This document shows positions 8 through 63,797 of a DNA stretch of 64,000 bases, piece by piece. The notes below the pieces were generated by a model that ran no database searches, was not told the DNA's origin, and was given only the letters and a program-made list of their open reading frames with translations. The stretch covers positions 62,001-126,000 of IMG/VR virus record IMGVR_UViG_3300040801_004034; one strand, written 5' to 3'. The position numbers were made by a program, and so were the translations under genes. The stretch's first letter is position 1. Each line of letters begins with the position of its first letter.

Positions 8-823
8 ATGTTTATCGGATTCATTTATATAGTATATTATATAGGTAATAATAGTATAATCAAGGACCACAGTTATATAGGTTCAAGATTATACAACAAA
101 GGTTGGGAGACGTACATGGGATCATCTGTATCAAATAACGAGAAGTGTGTTATTTGGCGAAATGAACTTAAAACCAATCCAGAGAATTTTAAACGTGTGA
201 TTTTAAAAAATGTGACTGATAGTGAGAACATTTACACCGAAGAACATTTAATGATGGAAAAATTTGGTGTTGATTTAAAATCCAATAGTAAGTGGATTAA
301 TAGATCTTTCCCGATATTAAATGGATTATCCGACAATTTCTTAGATGATGATCAGTTACAAGCTATAAAAGAAAAACGTAAACAAACATGCATACAAAAA
401 TATGGTGTTGATCACCCTTCTAAAACAATCATAAATAGAAAAAAATGTAAAGCGCGTTTCAACACTGATGATGTCCGTAAAAGACGAGGTAAAAGTATTT
501 CGAAAGCGTGGAAAAACAAAACAAAAATTGAACTAGAACAAATTACACAAAAACGTACAAAAAAATTACAGAAATATCTCAGTAACCAAAAAAATTATTC
601 AAAACACTGTGAAATGAGAAAACGTACAGCATTAAAATGGTGGGTCACAGTTGAATGTATTGAAACTAATAAAACATTTTCATTTTTTAAAAACGATAGT
701 TTATATCATATACAAGTAGGTCCTGGACAAATAATGAAACGTATAAGGAAAGTCACAATGTCACCTTTTAAAAGTAAAGATGGTATGACATACAGGTTGA
801 TATCATGTATTAAAAAACACTAA
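8..823 (+). CDS. Free-standing GIY-YIG (Seg-like) homing endonuclease
   Basis: N-terminal GFIYIV...YIGS...YMGSS motif; basic C-terminal region with a KRKQTCIQKYGV repeat typical of phage endonuclease DNA-binding tails. Confidence 0.7.
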   Translation: MFIGFIYIVYYIGNNSIIKDHSYIGSRLYNKGWETYMGSSVSNNEKCVIWRNELKTNPENFKRVILKNVTDSENIYTEEHLMMEKFGVDLKSNSKWINRSFPILNGLSDNFLDDDQLQAIKEKRKQTCIQKYGVDHPSKTIINRKKCKARFNTDDVRKRRGKSISKAWKNKTKIELEQITQKRTKKLQKYLSNQKNYSKHCEMRKRTALKWWVTVECIETNKTFSFFKNDSLYHIQVGPGQIMKRIRKVTMSPFKSKDGMTYRLISCIKKH

Positions 824-7975: not shown

Positions 7976-10570
7976 TCAACCTAGCAACTCAAGTAATGAT
8001 GTTTTAGTTTGGTTATCTGGTTTCTGAATAGGCCAATGAACTGTTTCATAAAAACGTCGTATACACTGAAACAGAACCTTTTCAAACATTATATTATAAT
8101 CGATTTCAATATTATCTTTAAACTCTTTCGGGTAGTCATATTTGAACCCTAAACAATCAATATTGTACCTATTTGGTTTTTGAACATAGAATGTTCTAAC
8201 TTTATCACCTGATTGAATTTTTTCATAATTAGATGCGATATCAAACCTATCAAGTAACAAGTTATGATAGTATGCAGCTTTTGCATGCATCGGCATACCT
8301 TTACATGTCTTAAACCCATCACACTGTTCGATATATTTTTCAAATTGATGAATACCTGAAATCGAAGCAATATCTTTCACATCCATTGCAATCACATCAT
8401 CATATGCTTTCGATAGAACACGATTAGTCTGCTGTATGCTTTGCGTTCTAAGCATTGTTTCAATGATATCCTTTGCATATGGTTTGATTTTAACTGGCAT
8501 TGTTGATCTTACAACTTCAACACCTTTGTATTTGAATTTATCACATGCAATACCTTCATCATCAAGAATACGGAGTACATAACGTTTCTTACCTGTAAAT
8601 ACACCAACACTTGCAATAACTTCACGCTTAAACACAAATGAGCAATTCTTAGAGTTTAGAGCTTTTGCTCCCCATTTTTTAATACCTACATTCAAGTAAT
8701 CTTCAACCTTTTGAATAGCGTCATAACCATCTTGCGTCACATACTGCTTGTTATCTTTTTCATCAATAACTTTAATACCTTGATGGTCAGTTAAAGCTTT
8801 AATCGATGCATATGTACTGTCTGTATCATTATATATTACAGATTTTTCAAGTGCTAATTCATCTACATCAGGTACTTGTTCTTTGATGTAATCTTTTATT
8901 AATTGATTAGCTTGTTTGATAACACCTTGACCTGTTAATGTAATCGACATACCAATATCTCTATCTCCCATTGGTGCATAACTATTTGCAAAGTATCCAT
9001 AGATTGAGTTAATGAAAATCTTAATACACAACTGTTTTGCATCTAGTTGTTCAATTTTATGTTTTACTTTACGTATTTCATCTTTATCAGCACCGGACTT
9101 TTCCATTTCGGCTTTTTTAACACGAAGTTTTTGCATCTCTTTCTTTACAACAACCCGTTTATCGTAATTGTACTGCAAAATCTTTGGCATAAGACCGAGA
9201 TTCTTTTGTGAAAACATAATATTCGCTTTACTGATTCCGACTTCATGTTTTTTAACAAATTTAACGAAATTCTCCGGCGTAAGTTCATGAACTGTCCCGT
9301 TTATGAGTTGTATTTTGATACATTCATCAGTTTTGCTCAATATCTTACCTAGTTTTGTTTCTGGAGACATATTAAGTGAAATCATCACGTTCGGATACAA
9401 ACTATTCGCATCAAAACTGATTACATTTTCATGAAAACCATCTTGAGGTTCACCTACATATGCTCCTGGAATTCTACCTTGTTCATTTCGTTTGAATGTT
9501 GGTATAATTTGACCTTGACGTCTAGCTTGAATTGCAGCACTACCATTAATAACGGAAATTGCACCAAGAGATTGTTCAAATGTGGTTAACCCAGTGTATG
9601 CTAACATTCGAGCCAATCCGAAATAGTTTAATTTCTCTTCTAGGTTGACAAGAAGTCTAACGTCCTGAATGTTGTATTCAACGAACTTTTGCCAGTTAGT
9701 ACGAGCTAACTCACCAATTGAAATATCACCATAATCGATTTTCTTCTGACCTAACTCGAGTTCGCCGATCGTATCAAGTTTGTAGTTTTCTTTTTCTCCA
9801 GGACTGAACTGTTTATAGACTTCAAGGTAGTCAAGTACCGATACACCTCGAATAGTCCATTTTTTAATAGCCATACCCGCATCGGTAATAATATCCCTGC
9901 ATGATATGTCTCTTGATGGAGATAAACGTTCCATCCATTTACGACCTACTATCTTATCCCCTCTAGCAATAAGGTATGGTAAGTCGAAACCATGTAAATT
10001 CCATGCACTTATGATATCAGGGTAGTCCTTCTCAAAATATAATATAAATCGTTGAAATAACTGTTCTTCATTATCACACTGAACATATTTTACATCAGGG
10101 TCGTTATTTTTATATGGTCCAATACCGAATACAGTATGAATGTTTGTAAGTGAATCATGTAGTGTAACAACATTAACAACTTGTTGCGGATCATGTATAT
10201 TTGGGAAACCTGTATCATCTACCTGTGTTTCAATATCGAGAAAAACACATTTGATAGGATGAATTGAGAAATCTTCATCTTCATTATGTTTCCAATATTC
10301 ATCTACTAAAAACTGCTGTACTGGTGGTAAATTCTCAAAGAACCGATTCGTTGATACATCATTTGTATATTTGTACCGTTCATAAGCAGTTCCAAAAGAT
10401 TTTTTGCGTAGTCCAGTTTTAAAAATAGATTGACCTTCACCATCACTATGCTCGATATAAAGATATGGTGAGTAGTGGTGTCTTACAACTGTTCTCTCAC
10501 CATTTTCATCCCATGTATGTACATATACACTTCTTCCTTTGGGATCATAATAAGCATTTCTATAACTCAT
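7976..10570 (-). CDS. gp43: Family B DNA polymerase (gp43-like)
   Basis: ExoI DIET, ExoII WNLHGFDLPY, YNIQD; Pol motifs FDANSLYP, KIFINSIYG, YNDTDS, KKRY. Confidence 0.97.
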   Translation of the reverse strand: MSYRNAYYDPKGRSVYVHTWDENGERTVVRHHYSPYLYIEHSDGEGQSIFKTGLRKKSFGTAYERYKYTNDVSTNRFFENLPPVQQFLVDEYWKHNEDEDFSIHPIKCVFLDIETQVDDTGFPNIHDPQQVVNVVTLHDSLTNIHTVFGIGPYKNNDPDVKYVQCDNEEQLFQRFILYFEKDYPDIISAWNLHGFDLPYLIARGDKIVGRKWMERLSPSRDISCRDIITDAGMAIKKWTIRGVSVLDYLEVYKQFSPGEKENYKLDTIGELELGQKKIDYGDISIGELARTNWQKFVEYNIQDVRLLVNLEEKLNYFGLARMLAYTGLTTFEQSLGAISVINGSAAIQARRQGQIIPTFKRNEQGRIPGAYVGEPQDGFHENVISFDANSLYPNVMISLNMSPETKLGKILSKTDECIKIQLINGTVHELTPENFVKFVKKHEVGISKANIMFSQKNLGLMPKILQYNYDKRVVVKKEMQKLRVKKAEMEKSGADKDEIRKVKHKIEQLDAKQLCIKIFINSIYGYFANSYAPMGDRDIGMSITLTGQGVIKQANQLIKDYIKEQVPDVDELALEKSVIYNDTDSTYASIKALTDHQGIKVIDEKDNKQYVTQDGYDAIQKVEDYLNVGIKKWGAKALNSKNCSFVFKREVIASVGVFTGKKRYVLRILDDEGIACDKFKYKGVEVVRSTMPVKIKPYAKDIIETMLRTQSIQQTNRVLSKAYDDVIAMDVKDIASISGIHQFEKYIEQCDGFKTCKGMPMHAKAAYYHNLLLDRFDIASNYEKIQSGDKVRTFYVQKPNRYNIDCLGFKYDYPKEFKDNIEIDYNIMFEKVLFQCIRRFYETVHWPIQKPDNQTKTSLLELLG

Positions 10571-10600: not shown

Positions 10601-11655
10601 TCAATTATACCTAGAAAGATTTTTGCGTAAGTCGCTACCATACCCATATTTGTACATCTCTAAATAACAATCGATATTTCGATCTGTTTCTAACCAACGT
10701 GTTTCAGCATATTGCCGAGCTTTCTTGCTCTGTGATTTATACTGTTTTGTGTTTGATAGCGTTTTTTGTATTTGATCAATCATCTCATCACCGGTCGAAA
10801 ATTTTATAGGTGCATTCTGATATGTACAAAGATCTTGACATGCAATAGGTAAACCAAATGCACTCGATTCAATATATTTCAGATCAGATTTTGATTTGTT
10901 AAATGTGTTATCCATTAATGGTGCAATCATCATATTACAATTCAGATCTTGTATAGTTTGCCCATAATCATAAAACTGAGCCCAAGGGTGAAATTCAATT
11001 TTACCACTTCGAACAAGATCACCTAAAGGTAAAGGATATGCTCCCATAAACACCCACTGATATTTGTCTACTGTCTTACGGATGACATCATTTACATGAT
11101 AAAAATCATCCTTATGCTTTACTCTACTATCAACATCAAAGTGCGCACCACTGCCTGTATATAATATACGAGGTTTTCTTTTGTATTTTTCTAAATTCTG
11201 CATGATCTTACTCTGATCATAGAAATGACCTAACCAGAATTTCGGCATAAAGTTTGGTAGCACTGTGATATTTTTATTACCTGTTTTTTCACTATAATAA
11301 TCTCTCATGAAATCATTTGTTACAGTAATTTCATCACACAGTGCCATAATCTGTTGAGTGGATTCTCTGATCTTCGGATCTGCAAATGCTTCTCTGTATT
11401 TGTTATAACCAGGAATGTCTTCATAGAAACAGATATCATCAATTTCATAAACAATTCTAAAACCGTCTTTATCAGCAACTTGTCTTAAGAACTTAACAAA
11501 TTCAAGCTGTTGCGGTGTTGCTTGTCGTTGTATCCTAACACATTTTGTACTTACATAATAACGCGGGTCAAGATTCATTACAGTGGTAGATTGTACAACA
11601 GCTTTTCTATGACCGTTCATTACCTGCTCTGGCCAAATCATACGCCAGTGACCGC
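10601..11655 (-). CDS. GT-B glycosyltransferase, exon 2
   Basis: After splicing reads ...ADYSG-C-GHWRMIWPE; YEIDD, DEITVT and APL..N.FNKSKSDLKYIE motifs of phage GT4-like enzymes. Confidence 0.85.
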
Positions 11656-11900
11656 CAATATCTTCAATACAGATCGTTACTCTGTACCCGTTTTAAACTG
11701 CTTTACGTTTCCGTAAAGATGAGACTATATCATCACCCTATTTTTGGGTGTTCTGCGCTTCCACTCACTTGAGTGTACTCCTTACGGATAGTCGTTGAAC
11801 CTTCTTCTTTCGAAGCTTGGCTGCTGATTGCCATTTTACAGGTTTCCAGCAATTCACAGAATTTTTCAATATATGTTACCATATAAAGGGTCACTAATTT
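11656..11900 (-). ncRNA. Group I self-splicing intron (ORF-less, IA-like, 245 nt)
   Basis: 5' exon ends in U pairing with G of the guide (GGUU/GACC); terminal omega-G; P/Q/R/S cores AAUUGCUGGAAA, AAUCAGCAG, GUUCAACGACUAU, GAUAUAGUC; P3 UUCUGUG/CGCAGAA; P7.1, P7.2, P8 and P9 hairpins; removal restores the frame. Confidence 0.92.
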
Positions 11901-12051
11901 AACCAGAGTAGTCAGCGAGGTAATTCAAACACCTAGGTAAGTCCATTTCTGGGAGTACAGGTGGTTTATGTTGCTTTGGTGCAGCTTGTTGTGTTGACGA
12001 GATACCTGCTTGCATCGGTATTCTCTGACTGAACTGTTGATTCATTATCAT
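11901..12051 (-). CDS. GT-B glycosyltransferase, exon 1
   Basis: MIMNQQF...PRCLNYLADYSG+T; joined to exon 2 gives a 401-aa protein. Confidence 0.8.
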
Positions 12052-12055
12052 AATA

Positions 12056-12928
12056 TTAAGATTTAATACCAAATATAATAAAATCAATATCGTAACCTTG
12101 TTCAATACAAGCATCGTGTTTACAAATATTTTGTTCAAGATGTTTATTCATTGTGTACGTAGATTTAACTTCAATTATCAAATTATCTTTTGGTATAAAA
12201 ATATCAGGAAAGTACTTTTTGTTTTTCGTTTTAAATGTATAATCTATAACAGGTATCAAATTATTATCTGTAACGATGTCATCAACTGTGTATCCGCATT
12301 CAAGAAGAAGTTTTATAGCTTTATCTTCATATCCTTGATATGCAAATGTCTTTCCGTTTATACTGAGTTGTTTTGTTTTAAACGCTGATTTTTGTTGTTT
12401 TGATAAAACTTGAGGTATATGCATCACATTACACACCCCGTATTTTTTCATAACAGCATCCTGATGTTTTTGTTGTATTATAGACCATCCACCATTTTTA
12501 ATAATTGTCTGTCTAGTCAATTCAACAGTTTTTTGTTTAAATAGTTGCTGCTCTTCCCAATTTCTTATATGATTACCATTCTCTGTTAGTACTCTTTGTA
12601 TAACACAAGGGTCGACACTATGCTGATTAGCTATGTAATTTATACCATACCCTTCTGAATATTGTTTAGTCATTCGACCTATTTCATTTTCTGTGAATGA
12701 TTTTTGAATAGTTTCATTACGCTTTTTGTTATACCTACTAAGATTTCTTGATTCAGCAGGAGATCTCAAGCATAGATCATTTTTCAAAATTATATTCTTT
12801 ATAACACTGACATTTACATTGTATTCTCTCGCCAGTTCTGTAACCGAGTACTCATCACAATATTTTACGATAATTTCCGCACTCTTACCGATCAATTTTT
12901 TACTTTCTCATACATTTTCCACGACCAT
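12056..12928 (-). CDS. Free-standing PD-(D/E)xK homing-type endonuclease (start uncertain, possibly disrupted)
   Basis: N-terminal HTH-like repeats, KKYGV repeat, C-terminal YFPDIFIP...IIEVKS; the promoter-linked ATG at 12928 is followed by an in-frame TGA at codon 7, alternative TTG start at 12895. Confidence 0.7.
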
Positions 12929-12954: not shown

Positions 12955-14760
12955 TTACTCAGTAAAATCTATACGCTTTGTTATACCGTTAGATTTTTCT
13001 AAGTACACAATTTCACCTGTCGCTTGTTTGATACTTTCTTTACGGTGACTAATAACAAAAACGCACTCGTTATATTTTTCAACACGTTCATTCAATATAT
13101 CCAATACAAGACCAACACCTTTTTCGTCAAGACTACTATCAAACAATTCATCGTAAAAATTCACGTTGTAATATACATCACCTTGTGCTTTACGCATATC
13201 AATAAACGAGAACAAGCATCCAATATCAATAGCTTTACGCTCAGCACCGCTAAAGTTATCATACATACACTGCTTACCTCGTTCGGAAACAATTTCTTCT
13301 TCAAAATACTCATTGAATCTACACACACAATTACTATCTAATTTTTTCAAGTAATAAGCAAGCTTGCTGTTAAAGTGTTGTAGTATTTTTCTTACAATAT
13401 AGCTTTTAACACCCTCTTCACTCACAACGAATTTAACAACATCGAGCATATTGATAGTCATCTTGATATTATCAAGTTCGGTTTTGATATCATCAATTTC
13501 ATTTTGTATTGTCGAAATTGTATCCCCAAATGATTCCTTTTCTTTTTGAATTTTTTGTATATCACCTTTTAGTGTTTTATTATACTCTTCAAGTTCAGTT
13601 ATGCGTTCAGCAATATGAGGTAATGATGTCAGCTGAGCTTGTATATCTTGTACCTTGGTTTCAACTGTCTTAATTGCATTGTTCACCATTTGACGTTCTT
13701 TAACGAGTTGATCATGCTCGTTCTGCTTGGTATCACAATCTTGTTTATGTTGTTTGATTTGTAATCTTATTTCATCTTTACTCTGATCAATGTGTTGTTT
13801 ATCATGATCAGAAATTGAACGTAAACACATCTCACAAACATCATCTTCAGTACCAATCTTTTTATATTTTTCACTAAGACTTTGTAATGCATGTTTGTGT
13901 TCAGCAATTACAGTTTTTATTTCATCAATGCTGCTATTATGTTTTTCTACCAATACATTGAGTTGTTCAGCTTTATCTTTAAACGGTTTAACGTCTTTAT
14001 CTTTTAACTCATCATACTCCTGTTTTTTACTCAGTATTTGCCTGTCATTAGACTCGATTTTTTCCTTAATTGTTTTGATACGCTTATTTTTACGTTCATC
14101 GAAGTCTTTTTGTTGTTCTGTTTGTGAGTTAAGAAACTTATTTTTTTCTTCAAGTCGTGTTATTTCAATTTCAAACGACTGTTTTATTTCACTGTAGTTT
14201 TGACGCAATTCCTGCATCATCTTAGAAAACATTTCAAGATTAAAAATCTGCTCAACGAACTTACGTTTATCACTTTTCTTTTTGCTCATGAACGGTACAT
14301 GATTATTAAGTGTCATAATAACACAATTTTGAAATATTTCAGGTGTTGATGATAATAATGTATGAATATATTCATTAGTATTCGCAATACTATCTCTCGT
14401 TTTATCAACATTATTTTTATATATTCTACACGCTGATGGGTTGAGTGTTCTTTCAATTAAGAACTCATTTTGGCCATGTTTCGGATCATCAACAGTAAAT
14501 GTTAATGTTACTCTACATACACCATTTGTTGTGTAGTTAGGTATGTATTTCTTTGATAAATTACGAAGAGTGTTACCGAATATAGCAAAATAAAATGCAT
14601 CAACGATTGTGCTCTTTCCAATACCGTTTCTACGATCTTCTTTATCTTTGTTGATACCAGTAATGATGTGGAGACCTTTTTTGAAGTCTACAACTACTGG
14701 TTCTTCACCCACTGAAAGAAAATTTTCAATAGACAGCTGTTTAAAGTATACTTTTTTCAT
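12955..14760 (-). CDS. gp46: Recombination endonuclease subunit gp46 (Rad50/SbcC-like)
   Basis: NFLSVG, Walker A NGIGKST, coiled coil with CEMC hook, FSGAE signature, DELFDSSLD, VISH. Confidence 0.95.
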   Translation of the reverse strand: MKKVYFKQLSIENFLSVGEEPVVVDFKKGLHIITGINKDKEDRRNGIGKSTIVDAFYFAIFGNTLRNLSKKYIPNYTTNGVCRVTLTFTVDDPKHGQNEFLIERTLNPSACRIYKNNVDKTRDSIANTNEYIHTLLSSTPEIFQNCVIMTLNNHVPFMSKKKSDKRKFVEQIFNLEMFSKMMQELRQNYSEIKQSFEIEITRLEEKNKFLNSQTEQQKDFDERKNKRIKTIKEKIESNDRQILSKKQEYDELKDKDVKPFKDKAEQLNVLVEKHNSSIDEIKTVIAEHKHALQSLSEKYKKIGTEDDVCEMCLRSISDHDKQHIDQSKDEIRLQIKQHKQDCDTKQNEHDQLVKERQMVNNAIKTVETKVQDIQAQLTSLPHIAERITELEEYNKTLKGDIQKIQKEKESFGDTISTIQNEIDDIKTELDNIKMTINMLDVVKFVVSEEGVKSYIVRKILQHFNSKLAYYLKKLDSNCVCRFNEYFEEEIVSERGKQCMYDNFSGAERKAIDIGCLFSFIDMRKAQGDVYYNVNFYDELFDSSLDEKGVGLVLDILNERVEKYNECVFVISHRKESIKQATGEIVYLEKSNGITKRIDFTE

Positions 14761-46537: not shown

Positions 46538-47291
46538 ACTATACTGGAGCGGAGGAGCTAACTTCGGAGATGCATTATCTCCGGTTTTATACAAGTTAAT
46601 AACTGGTTTTGAACCTATTAGTGTTAACGAGCACCAATCACCCAAGCATGTAGCAATAGGATCTATATTAAACCATGCAAAACCAGGGGATACAGTGTGG
46701 GGATCCGGGTTGGCATGGCGATATGATAAGGTTTCACAGGGTATTAACATAAAAGCAGTAAGAGGACCGTTATCCCGTGATATTTGCTTAAGAAATGGTG
46801 TTGATTGTCCTGAAATCTACGGTGACCCAGCTATGTTACTACCTCGTTTCTTTGAAAAATCGGAAACACAGTATAAACTAGGTATAATACCACATATTGT
46901 TGATTTTAAGCTTGTAAACATACCAGCTCAGTATAAAAATGATGTTTTGAAGATAGATTTAACACAATCGATTGATGAATGTATCAAAAACATAACAAGC
47001 TGTGATAAAATAGTGTCAAGTTCATTACATGGACTCATTGCAGCTGATGCATATAACATACCTAACACATGGTGTCGGTTTAGTAATGGTGTTTTAGGTG
47101 ATGGTACGAAATTTGCTGATCATTTCCTTGCTATAGGTAAACGAGATATGAAATGTATTGATTTATCACGGAACAACACAAAGAAATACTCATTTGATGA
47201 TATTATTAACCATATAAACGATTGTGATGTGTCTAAATATACAGATATACAGGGAGATGAATTGCTCAATGCATGTCCATTTGAATATTAA
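46524..47291 (+). CDS. Polysaccharide pyruvyl transferase family protein
   Basis: NFGDAL, IGSIL, WGSG, AVRGPLS, GDPA, SSSLHGLIAADAY. Confidence 0.88.
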   Translation: MMMNKLYWSGGANFGDALSPVLYKLITGFEPISVNEHQSPKHVAIGSILNHAKPGDTVWGSGLAWRYDKVSQGINIKAVRGPLSRDICLRNGVDCPEIYGDPAMLLPRFFEKSETQYKLGIIPHIVDFKLVNIPAQYKNDVLKIDLTQSIDECIKNITSCDKIVSSSLHGLIAADAYNIPNTWCRFSNGVLGDGTKFADHFLAIGKRDMKCIDLSRNNTKKYSFDDIINHINDCDVSKYTDIQGDELLNACPFEY

Positions 47292-63451: not shown

Positions 63452-63549
63452 CGTTTTAATCCATATAATCTAGGCAAGAGCTTGCAGGCTTATCATTTAG
63501 GTTATATGGCGCCAGATATATAGTAACTGCAATTACAAATATACCTGCG

Positions 63550-63617
63550 TTGTATCGGTCGGCTGGCGGAGACGCCCTCGTGAAGAGGGAGGTGATTGGT
63601 TCGATTCCAATATACAA
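63550..63617 (+). tRNA. Degenerate tRNA-like element (identity unclear)
   Basis: Canonical T-arm ATTGG-TTCGATT-CCAAT, CCCTC/GAGGG stem with GTGAA loop, short TTGTAT/ATACAA acceptor. Confidence 0.45.
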
Positions 63618-63710
63618 ATTCGATATTTATACCTATGCAAGTCATGTGTGAGTCATGGGGACGAAACATATAATAAACCACATGTCATGTATATGTTTCA
63701 AATTTTATAA

Positions 63711-63797
63711 GCCTAGGTGGCTCAGTTGGTCGACAGCGCCTGCTTTGTAAGCAGGATCCTACAGGACTCGTGGGTTCGAATCCCACCCTAGGCTCCA
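63711..63797 (+). tRNA. trnT: tRNA-Thr(UGU) with extended variable arm
   Basis: GCCTAGG/CCTAGGC acceptor, CCTGC-TTTGTAA-GCAGG anticodon arm, GTGGG-TTCGAAT-CCCAC T-arm, encoded CCA. Confidence 0.9.

What the first reader, a model, noticed from the sequence alone, without database searches (positions are those of the whole stretch)
11656..11900. Unannotated group I intron inside a glycosyltransferase gene
On the minus strand, exon 1 ends TCT GGT T and exon 2 starts GC GGT CAC TGG. Removing 245 nt rebuilds the codon TGC and the motif ADYSG-C-GHWRM. The insert has a U.G wobble at the 5' splice site, a guide (AGUGACC) also complementary to exon 2 (GGUCACU), an omega-G, P3/P4/P7 pairings and the two extra P7.1/P7.2 stems of subgroup IA. 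Phage group I introns are mostly known in td, nrd, polymerase, terminase, lysin and psbA genes; a glycosyltransferase host is unusual to my knowledge.
Basis: seen in the sequence. Interest (0 to 1): 0.75.

Follow-up and report, generated by a model that had tools for sequence, protein, structure and literature searches.

The report
Phage intron with a neighbouring nuclease
A 245-base self-splicing group I intron really does interrupt a sugar-transferase gene of an uncultured T4-like phage, and in every lineage that carries it a free-standing nuclease gene sits next to it, so the two probably spread together as one selfish DNA cassette.

Summary
Window 11900..11656 (minus strand, 245 nt) matches Rfam RF00028 at 112 bits. 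Removing it joins a 50-codon exon 1 to a 350-codon exon 2. The joined 401-aa protein reads ADYSG-C-GHWRM, which 119 of 119 close homologs and 79 of 80 related IMG/VR loci read without interruption.

Six further diverged copies (58-93% identical) show compensatory changes in 34 of 63 base pairs, including P1. P7 is invariant, and P7.1/P7.2 mark subgroup IA. The host protein models as a GT-B (GT4-like) glycosyltransferase.

There is also an uncharacterised 279-aa gene, with tandem HTH domains and a PD-(D/E)XK nuclease (Pfam DUF7487), between the Rad50-like gene and exon 1. It is present in all 7 intron lineages. About 130 intron-less loci with upstream flank lack it; three distant intron-less lineages carry a homolog.

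A ~90% identical strain pair differs by exactly nuclease + exon 1 + intron. Two lineages carry the intron 13 nt upstream.

[quoted passage not shown] Neither splicing nor cleavage has been shown experimentally. It is a new member of a known kind, in an unusual host gene.

The parts
11901..12051 (-). Exon 1 of the glycosyltransferase gene: 50 codons plus the first base of the Cys codon. An in-frame TAA is formed across the 5' splice site.
   Evidence: Translation gives MIMNQQ...LADYSG. The spliced protein is 401 aa, matching homologs of about 402 aa.
11656..11900 (-). ORF-less group I intron, 245 nt, subgroup IA (IA2-like).
   Evidence: RF00028 at 112.1 bits. Excision restores YSGCGHWR, which is contiguous in 119/119 homologs and 79/80 loci. 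Covariation is seen in 34 of 63 pairs over 7 copies.
10601..11655 (-). Exon 2 of the glycosyltransferase gene (last two bases of the Cys codon, 350 codons, stop).
   Evidence: Translation. Hit to phrog_7162 glycosyltransferase. 87 of 89 family-invariant residues are kept in the spliced product.
11889..11904 (-). P1: exon GGUU plus intron A (11904..11900) paired with the internal guide UGACC (11893..11889). The U.G wobble lies at the splice site.
   Evidence: The Gly-codon third base and the guide covary: UA in 2 lineages, CG in 5.
11723..11793 (-). P7 pseudoknot (GACUA 11793..11789 with UAGUC 11727..11723). It encloses P7.1 (11788..11779), P7.2 (11775..11762), P3' (11757..11751) and P8 (11750..11734).
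   Evidence: P7 is invariant in 7/7 introns. P7.1, P7.2, P3 and P8 show compensatory changes.
11656..11656 (-). Omega-G, the last intron nucleotide.
   Evidence: G precedes the 3' splice site in 7/7 related introns. Only this G keeps the frame.
12056..12895 (-). Free-standing nuclease gene, 279 aa: tandem HTH domains plus a C-terminal PD-(D/E)XK domain (Pfam DUF7487). It is the candidate homing endonuclease. It ends 4 nt before the start of exon 1.
   Evidence: Pfam PF24308, E 6.8e-35. Invariant D231, E242, K244. The model's residues 168-279 match TnsA at Z 8.8, Vsr at 7.4 and I-Bth0305I at 6.6. The gene is present in all 7 intron lineages and absent from 73 marine and about 58 other intron-less loci.
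12955..14760 (-). Rad50/gp46-like gene (context). In intron-less relatives it directly abuts the glycosyltransferase gene.
   Evidence: Pfam AAA_23/SMC_N. The gap to the glycosyltransferase gene is 0-162 nt in intron-less loci, against 907-1336 nt in intron-bearing ones.
7976..10570 (-). Family B DNA polymerase (context). It is 29% identical to cyanophage and pelagiphage gp43.

Best explanation
[quoted passage not shown] In the transcript it folds into P1-P9.2 with a P3/P7 pseudoknot. Exogenous guanosine attacks after the exon U that wobbles with guide G9. The freed exon 1 then attacks after the omega-G. This joins GGT T to GC GGT and restores the Cys codon in the beta1-loop-alpha1 glycine-rich loop of a GT-B glycosyltransferase. 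An in-frame TAA at the 5' splice site stops ribosomes on unspliced RNA. All of these splicing steps are inferred from structure and homology; none was observed.

The intron has no endonuclease of its own. The gene immediately upstream encodes a tandem-HTH + PD-(D/E)XK nuclease (DUF7487). I infer that this is a free-standing homing endonuclease that cuts intron-less alleles in or near the conserved YSGCGHW-coding stretch. Repair from the donor genome would then copy nuclease gene, exon 1 and intron together. The intron, or in other lineages sequence divergence, would protect the carrier's own gene.

My confidence differs by claim: it is a group I intron at these exact borders, about 0.97; it is splicing-competent, about 0.9; it is mobilised by the neighbouring nuclease, about 0.65.
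For: Intron identity:
- RF00028 scores 112 bits here and 82-112 bits in six diverged copies.
- 34 of 63 pairs change compensatorily, P7 is invariant, and P1 covaries with a synonymous Gly codon base.
- Excision restores a motif that is contiguous in 119/119 homologs and in 79 marine, 50 clade-b and 20 distant loci.
- The spliced proteins keep 85-89 of 89 invariant residues.
- The nearest DNA relatives are IA2 phage introns: Twort, beta22 thymidylate synthase, and Staphylococcus and Bacillus phages.

Nuclease link:
- The nuclease's closest relatives (41-55% identical) whose context could be read all lie between gp46 and a split glycosyltransferase gene.
- Co-occurrence is 7 of 7 intron lineages against 0 of 73 marine intron-less loci, and 0 of about 58 further intron-less loci with upstream flank.
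- L087 (nuclease+, intron+) and L197/L198 (neither) are about 90% identical in gp46, exon 2 and the polymerase. Their exon 1 is only 65% identical. Control pairs give 88-97% (n=4). Nuclease, exon 1 and intron therefore look like one imported block.
- The distribution on the gp46 tree is patchy and needs at least 3 changes.
- The nuclease tree conflicts with the glycosyltransferase tree (AU p 0.018).
- The nuclease has a PD...E-V-K motif and a Vsr/TnsA/I-Bth0305I-like fold.
- The genome holds at least 3 DUF7487 genes, as T4 holds seg and mob gene families.
- The target stretch is invariant at all first and second codon positions in 49 distinct intron-less alleles.
Against: - No spliced RNA was found. 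The only transcriptome match is one 255-nt contig that crosses the 5' splice site unspliced. It could be precursor RNA or contaminating DNA.
- No cleavage data exist, and the DNA-protein complex prediction was not run by the tool.
- Three distant lineages carry the nuclease without an intron (L092-L094), so the nuclease does not need the intron.
- The window's own glycosyltransferase shows no co-conversion signal around the junction (2/45 against 11/321 sites, p 0.67).
- The clade used in the AU test was named after seeing the identity tables.
- The control for exon-1 divergence rests on only 4 pairs.
- Many joint losses from an ancestral nuclease+intron state would also give a patchy distribution.
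Confidence: 0.75

Rival explanations
1. The intron is real and splices, but it is an immobile relic inherited vertically. The upstream nuclease is an unrelated free-standing selfish gene, and the two co-occur only because they are 155 nt apart and were lost together in most lineages.
For: Nuclease-only lineages exist (L092-L094). The gp46/glycosyltransferase junction also holds unrelated inserted ORFs in other lineages, so it is a general insertion hotspot. No co-conversion signal was found in the window's own gene.
Against: Precise joint loss of two separate segments (840 nt and 245 nt) with the reading frame kept would have to happen repeatedly. L087 and L197 differ by the whole block, with a diverged exon 1 between otherwise 90%-identical flanks. 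That fits import better than two clean deletions. The nuclease tree is incongruent with the host gene tree.
Confidence: 0.15
2. The intron spreads by itself through reverse splicing into RNA sites that match its 4-5 nt guide (GGYU), followed by reverse transcription and recombination. The nuclease plays no part.
For: Two insertion sites 13 nt apart both follow GGCU or GGUU and both match the guide. Related introns at two nearby sites are the classic circumstantial sign of reverse splicing (PMC3984707).
Against: This does not explain why all seven intron lineages also carry the nuclease gene. It also does not explain why exon 1 travels with the block. 31 of 44 distinct intron-less alleles offer GGYT at the site yet are empty. 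No reverse transcriptase was looked for or seen at the locus.
Confidence: 0.07
3. The insert is a decayed intron that no longer splices, and the glycosyltransferase gene is a pseudogene.
For: No spliced RNA has been observed.
Against: All core helices are intact and maintained by compensatory changes in seven lineages. Both exons are open, in phase, and keep 85-89 of 89 invariant residues.
Confidence: 0.02
4. There is no intron. Either two separate small genes lie here, or the locus is a chimeric assembly.
For: Gene callers report separate 49/50-aa and 346-aa ORFs.
Against: The covariance-model E-value is 2.6e-28. The identical locus occurs in several independent assemblies and runs. Homologs are single proteins of about 402 aa.
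Confidence: 0.01

Closest known systems
Phage subgroup IA2 group I introns (T4 td/nrdB/sunY, Staphylococcus phage Twort orf142, Bacillus phage beta22 thymidylate synthase, SPO1/Bastille polymerase introns)
   Same: Same core, with P7.1/P7.2 between P7 and P3', a U.G at the 5' splice site, an omega-G, and an early in-frame stop. The DNA is 68-78% identical over 70-90% of the intron to such introns. The intron sits in a highly conserved active-site loop of an enzyme gene of a T4-like phage.
   Different: The host gene is a GT-B glycosyltransferase, not a nucleotide-metabolism, polymerase, structural or psbA gene. The intron carries no internal ORF. The phage is uncultured, and its polymerase is only 29% identical to known T4-like phages.
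Collaborative homing: F-CphI and the psbA intron of cyanophage S-PM2 (Zeng, Bonocora and Shub 2009, as summarised in PMC6083498 and PMC3984707)
   Same: [quoted passage not shown] The intron would interrupt the nuclease's presumed target.
   Different: The nuclease family differs: PD-(D/E)XK DUF7487 with tandem HTH domains here, against the Endo VII motif in F-CphI. Cleavage at the insertion site is untested here. This case adds population evidence (7 lineages, two insertion sites, nuclease-only relatives).
Trans homing: T4 MobE and the nrdB intron with defunct I-TevIII (PMC2790892)
   Same: A neighbouring free-standing endonuclease mobilises an intron that cannot move itself. Flanking sequence is co-converted. 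The nuclease gene and the intron lie well within the roughly 2-kb co-conversion range.
   Different: MobE is an HNH enzyme that nicks away from the insertion site. Here the cut site is unknown and the intron never had an ORF.
I-Bth0305I (EDxHD) and I-Ssp6803I (PD-(D/E)XK) homing endonucleases
   Same: The catalytic domain has a Vsr/restriction-endonuclease-like fold and is joined to a separate DNA-binding region (I-Bth0305I, Z 6.6 over 77 residues).
   Different: There is no detectable sequence relationship to any solved structure. Those enzymes are intron-encoded, whereas this one is free-standing here.

Membership tests
Group I intron (Rfam RF00028) | Covariance-model score above the curated gathering score | tested here: met
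   112.1 bits against 50. Six relatives score 82-112 bits.
Group I intron (Rfam RF00028) | P1 formed by the exon end and an internal guide, with U.G at the 5' splice site | tested here: met
   GGUU|A pairs with UGACC. The U.G is conserved in 7/7. The neighbouring pair covaries, UA in 2 and CG in 5.
Group I intron (Rfam RF00028) | Conserved core P3-P8 and P4-P6 with the P7 guanosine-binding helix | tested here: met
   All helices were found. 34 of 63 pairs are compensatory. P7 (GACUA/UAGUC) is invariant.
Group I intron (Rfam RF00028) | Terminal omega-G, and excision that restores the host reading frame | tested here: met
   G at 11656. The spliced product reads YSGCGHWR, as do 119/119 homologs.
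Group I intron (Rfam RF00028) | GTP-dependent self-splicing, or a spliced junction in RNA | tested here: inconclusive
   Four metatranscriptome runs were laid on the locus. Only one contig matched, and it was unspliced.
Subgroup IA2 | Extra stems P7.1 and P7.2 between P7 and P3', and no P5abc extension | tested here: met
   P7.1 lies at 11788..11779 and P7.2 at 11775..11762, both with compensatory changes. P5 is a short hairpin.
Subgroup IA2 | Best match to the subgroup-specific (GISSD) model | not testable with these tools
   No subgroup models are available. The only support is DNA similarity to introns that the literature classes as IA2 (PMC11878797 notes that IA2 is heterogeneous).
Collaborative / trans homing cassette | Intron without its own endonuclease ORF | tested here: met
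   The intron is 245 nt. The only internal ORF (53 aa, GTG start, 11733..11894) overlies the ribozyme core, where the substitutions across copies are compensatory base-pair changes. The corresponding frame in L090 is broken by stops.
Collaborative / trans homing cassette | Free-standing endonuclease gene within co-conversion distance, co-distributed with the intron | tested here: met
   The nuclease stop codon lies 155 nt from the insertion site. Co-occurrence is 7/7 against 0/73 and 0 of about 58. One strain pair differs by the whole block.
Collaborative / trans homing cassette | The endonuclease cleaves intron-less alleles at or near the insertion site, and the intron-bearing allele is resistant | not testable with these tools
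   This needs a cleavage assay.
PD-(D/E)XK nuclease superfamily | Catalytic D ... (D/E)-x-K motif on a restriction-endonuclease-like fold | tested here: met
   P-D231 ... E242-V-K244 is invariant in 10 sequences. The fold matches TnsA, Vsr, I-Bth0305I, Bax1 and XisH at Z 5.6-8.8.
GT-B glycosyltransferase (GT4-like) | Two Rossmann-like domains superposable on GT4 enzymes | tested here: met
   The model of homolog P0004 (pLDDT 86.8, pTM 0.82) matches BshA, SenB, PglA, WaaG and MshA at E 4e-11 to 1e-8, TM about 0.6.
GT-B glycosyltransferase (GT4-like) | Match to the Pfam Glycos_transf_1 / Glyco_trans_4 profiles | tested here: not met
   There is no Pfam or NCBIfam hit. The only sequence hit is phrog_7162. 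It has the fold but is not a sequence-level member. Donor and acceptor are unknown.

The most novel reading that the evidence does not exclude
DUF7487 proteins are a so-far unrecognised family of free-standing PD-(D/E)XK homing endonucleases. This locus is a natural population snapshot of collaborative homing. The nuclease targets the YSGCGHW-coding stretch of the glycosyltransferase gene. An ORF-less intron that landed in that stretch protects the carrier and is carried along. The intron has since shifted 13 nt to a second guide-matching site in one lineage, by reverse splicing or imprecise repair. Nuclease-only lineages would represent the stage before intron capture.
Probability: 0.45. Interest if true: 0.6.

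Novelty: new member of a known kind. Interest (0 to 1): 0.5.

Why it matters
Only two phage systems have been described in which a free-standing endonuclease and an intron that cannot move by itself share a target: F-CphI/psbA and MobE/nrdB. They underpin the leading model of how mobile introns arise.

This locus offers a third candidate, with a different nuclease fold. It also offers carriers, empty alleles, nuclease-only alleles and two insertion sites, all sampled from nature. The model can therefore be tested with a handful of synthetic substrates.

The finding also gives a first functional lead for Pfam DUF7487. It corrects a split gene call for a widespread marine and freshwater phage glycosyltransferase. 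And it extends the list of phage genes known to host group I introns.

Tried and rejected
- Megablast of the gene against 50,697 phage records found no match. Relatives had to come from metagenomes.
- Sequence searches of the nuclease and the glycosyltransferase against PDB chains found nothing useful. Pfam and NCBIfam gave no hit for the glycosyltransferase.
- RNA evidence was sought in two run searches and one read-laying run. Only one unspliced contig turned up, so splicing is not shown.
- The prediction of the nuclease on a 50-bp intron-less target was not folded by the tool, and it counts for nothing.
- A test for co-converted donor-like residues around the junction in the window's own gene was negative (p 0.67).
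I reject it as a conserved P10.
- The 53-aa ORF inside the intron is dismissed as a by-product of the conserved RNA core.
- One Rfam batch call missed the L044 intron because of its speed filters. A focused call scored it at 96.6 bits.
- The careful glycosyltransferase tree and its AU test did not finish in time. Only the quick tree is cited.

Full report
**1. What is in the sequence**

The window is bases 62001-126000 of a 221-kb IMG/VR virus record. The region around the finding reads on the minus strand. From upstream to downstream it holds:
- a Rad50/gp46-like gene (12955-14760);
- a 279-aa ORF (12056-12895);
- a 50-codon ORF ending ...ADYSG (11902-12051);
- 245 nt without a convincing ORF;
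- a frame that opens GHWRMIWPEQ... and runs 350 codons (10601-11653);
- a family B DNA polymerase (7976-10570).

The polymerase is only about 29% identical to the gp43 of cyanophages and of Pelagibacter phage HTVC008M. This is therefore a distant, uncultured T4-like phage. The DNA runs that hold it come from a microbial-mat metagenome.

**2.

Rfam RF00028 matches 11910..11701(-) at 112.1 bits, E 2.6e-28. It is the only such match in the genome.

Exon 1 ends GGT T at 11901. The intron runs 11900..11656. Exon 2 starts GC GGT at 11655.

Splicing in silico gives a 401-aa protein with ADYSGCGHWRM. The 119 best database homologs are about 402 aa and 71-74% identical. All of them read the DYSGCG-x-W-R/K motif contiguously across the junction, and 117 have the preceding Ala as well. 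Of 80 related IMG/VR loci, 79 are uninterrupted. Identical copies of the interrupted locus occur in three other assemblies.

**3. Structure and covariation**

I found six further diverged introns in the same gene: L044, L087, L091, L089, L086 and L090. They are 58-93% identical to one another and score 82-112 bits against RF00028.

In the seven-way alignment, RNAalifold predicts 66 pairs, 34 of them with compensatory changes. My own count on the classical helices, pseudoknot included, gives 34 of 63.

In window coordinates the elements are:

| Element | Coordinates |
|---|---|
| P1 | 11904-11900 / 11893-11889 |
| P2 | 11885-11870 |
| P3 | 11861-11855 / 11757-11751 |
| P4-P5 | 11851-11822 |
| P6/P6a | 11821-11799 |
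| P7 | 11793-11789 / 11727-11723 |
| P7.1 | 11788-11779 |
| P7.2 | 11775-11762 |
| P8 | 11750-11734 |
| P9 | 11717-11702 |
| P9.2 | 11686-11668 |
| omega-G | 11656 |

P7 is invariant in all seven copies.

In P1, the third base of the Gly codon and its guide partner change together. They are U-A in the window and L089, and C-G in the other five. All seven carriers use GGY for this codon, while 13 of 44 distinct empty alleles use GGR.

P7.1 and P7.2 place the intron in subgroup IA. Its nearest DNA relatives are introns of Twort, beta22, and Staphylococcus, Bacillus, Acinetobacter and Clostridioides phages.

All seven introns put an in-frame stop within two codons of the 5' splice site.

But it competes with P1 and is weak elsewhere (-4.5 to -9.7 kcal/mol).

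**4. The host gene**

Pfam and NCBIfam find nothing. PHROG 7162, annotated as glycosyltransferase, matches at E 5.5e-20.

An AlphaFold model of the intron-less homolog P0004 has pLDDT 86.8 and pTM 0.82. It superposes on GT-B/GT4 enzymes (BshA, SenB, PglA, WaaG, MshA, WclY) at E 1e-8 to 2e-12.

The insertion site lies in the loop between the first strand and first helix of the N-terminal domain. This is the most conserved N-terminal motif. All of its first and second codon positions are invariant in 49 distinct empty alleles.

The spliced proteins of six carriers keep 85-89 of 89 invariant residues. The gene is therefore under selection, and splicing must work. The substrate of the enzyme is unknown.

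**5. The neighbouring nuclease**

The 279-aa ORF belongs to Pfam DUF7487 (E 6.8e-35). No paper in the library mentions this family.

Ten relatives share an invariant P-D ... E-V-K motif. The model (pLDDT 86) has tandem helix-turn-helix units at residues 1-118. Its C-terminal domain matches TnsA (Z 8.8), Vsr (7.4) and the catalytic domain of the homing endonuclease I-Bth0305I (6.6).

The genome holds at least two more strong DUF7487 genes.

**6. Distribution of nuclease and intron**

- Marine relatives: in 73 empty marine loci with upstream flank, gp46 abuts the glycosyltransferase gene with a gap of 0-162 nt, and no nuclease homolog is found in those loci.
- Nuclease relatives: I looked up or fetched the context of six of the nuclease's closest full-length relatives (41-55% identical). 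All six lie between gp46 and a split glycosyltransferase gene.
- Intron lineages: all seven intron lineages therefore carry the nuclease.
- Wider scans: two further IMG/VR scans gave 77 loci from the two other clades of the gene. None has an intron. Only two of them have the nuclease, and those two are the already known nuclease-only phages.
- Nuclease-only lineages: L092, L093 and L094 have a different motif at the site (GMDGCFFYRRG, SGDGCMQYRRG, DRQGCGQWRVG).

**7. Signs of movement**

- On a gp46 tree the carriers are scattered, and at least three changes are needed.
- The glycosyltransferase tree groups the window with L044 and L089 (support 100). The nuclease tree instead groups the window's nuclease with those of L086/L090 and L087/L091. 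An AU test rejects the host-like grouping (p 0.018). The group was chosen after I had seen the identity tables.
- The sharpest case is L087 against L197/L198. The two are about 90% identical in gp46, exon 2 and the polymerase. L087 has nuclease and intron; L197/L198 have neither. Exon 1, which lies between the two inserts, is only 65% identical. Four control pairs of empty alleles at a similar distance give 88-97%. This fits import of nuclease + exon 1 + intron as one block, with a short tract downstream of the intron.
- For the window itself I found no such signal.

**8. Two insertion sites**

In L086 and L090 the intron lies 13 nt upstream, between the Ala and Asp codons (YLA|DYSG). It again follows GGCU, which matches the guide.

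These two phages are sisters in both the glycosyltransferase tree and the nuclease tree, so one relocation event is enough. Three causes are possible: reverse splicing into a second guide-matching site, imprecise repair, or an independent capture.

If the nuclease's site spans both positions, either insertion would protect the carrier. This is inference only.

**9. Mechanism and its status**

Shown by computation:
- the identity of the intron, its borders and its structure;
- an intact host gene;
- the nuclease fold and catalytic motif;
- strict co-distribution of nuclease and intron;
- block-wise presence or absence between near-identical strains.

Inferred:
- self-splicing;
- the nuclease cutting empty alleles;
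- protection of the carrier by the intron.

The literature describes both variants. In collaborative homing the cut is at the insertion site and the intron protects (F-CphI/psbA; PMC6083498, PMC3984707). In trans homing the cut is nearby and the intron rides along (MobE/nrdB; PMC2790892). My data do not tell the two apart.

**10. Verdict**

As an intron it is a new member of a well-known kind, in an unusual host gene. The added interest is the partnership with an uncharacterised nuclease family and the natural series of allele states.

Noticed in passing
L086:4544-4785 and L090:3488-3729: In two related phages the homologous intron sits 13 nt upstream of the usual site (YLA|DYSG instead of DYSG|CG). 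It again follows a guide-matching GGCU. The intron has therefore changed site within the same conserved motif.
   Followed up: partly
L092:2501-3328, L093:1207-2037, L094:2501-3256: Three distant relatives carry a homolog of the nuclease (31-40% identical) between gp46 and an uninterrupted glycosyltransferase gene. The motif at the site differs in these genes. These are nuclease-only alleles.
   Followed up: partly
L200:1995-2753(-), L235:1994-2758(-), L177:2351-2962, L249:2142-2738: The gp46/glycosyltransferase junction is an insertion hotspot. Other lineages hold unrelated ORFs there: one with a NUMOD3 motif, one with C2H2 zinc fingers, a family of unknown 200-220-aa proteins, and a TylF-like methyltransferase.
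   Followed up: partly
L132:555-2004: On a Tara scaffold, a gene resembling a giant-virus major capsid protein is followed by a group I intron (RF00028, 104.9 bits, 631-909). A 326-aa DUF7487 ORF comes right after the ribozyme core. It is possibly an intron-encoded member of the same nuclease family.
   Followed up: partly
L167:1190-3433: Another group I intron (85.6 bits) lies at the start of a 300-aa ORF that I take to be PCNA-like from its sequence alone (not tested). A 328-aa DUF7487 ORF lies just downstream. A further ORF upstream has a PD-(D/E)XK-like motif.
   Followed up: no
genome G000:C1:154519-155088(-), 46571-47005(+); window 248-454(+): The same phage genome holds two more strong DUF7487/TnsA-like nuclease genes with HTH domains, plus two weak matches. 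This resembles the multi-copy seg and mob endonuclease families of T4.
   Followed up: partly
window 63711-63797(+): A tRNA-Thr (anticodon TGT) is 87 nt long, with a 12-nt insertion in the variable region. That is unusual for a threonine tRNA. A normal tRNA-Phe lies at 63549-63619.
   Followed up: no
window 11718-11971: A 2025 sediment metatranscriptome holds a 255-nt contig, about 97% identical, that crosses the 5' splice site unspliced. It may be precursor RNA or contaminating DNA of a close relative.
   Followed up: yes
window 11899-11901(-): The splice junction itself creates an in-frame TAA (GGT T|AA). All seven related introns place a stop within two codons of the 5' splice site. Ribosomes are therefore kept out of the ribozyme.
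   Followed up: yes
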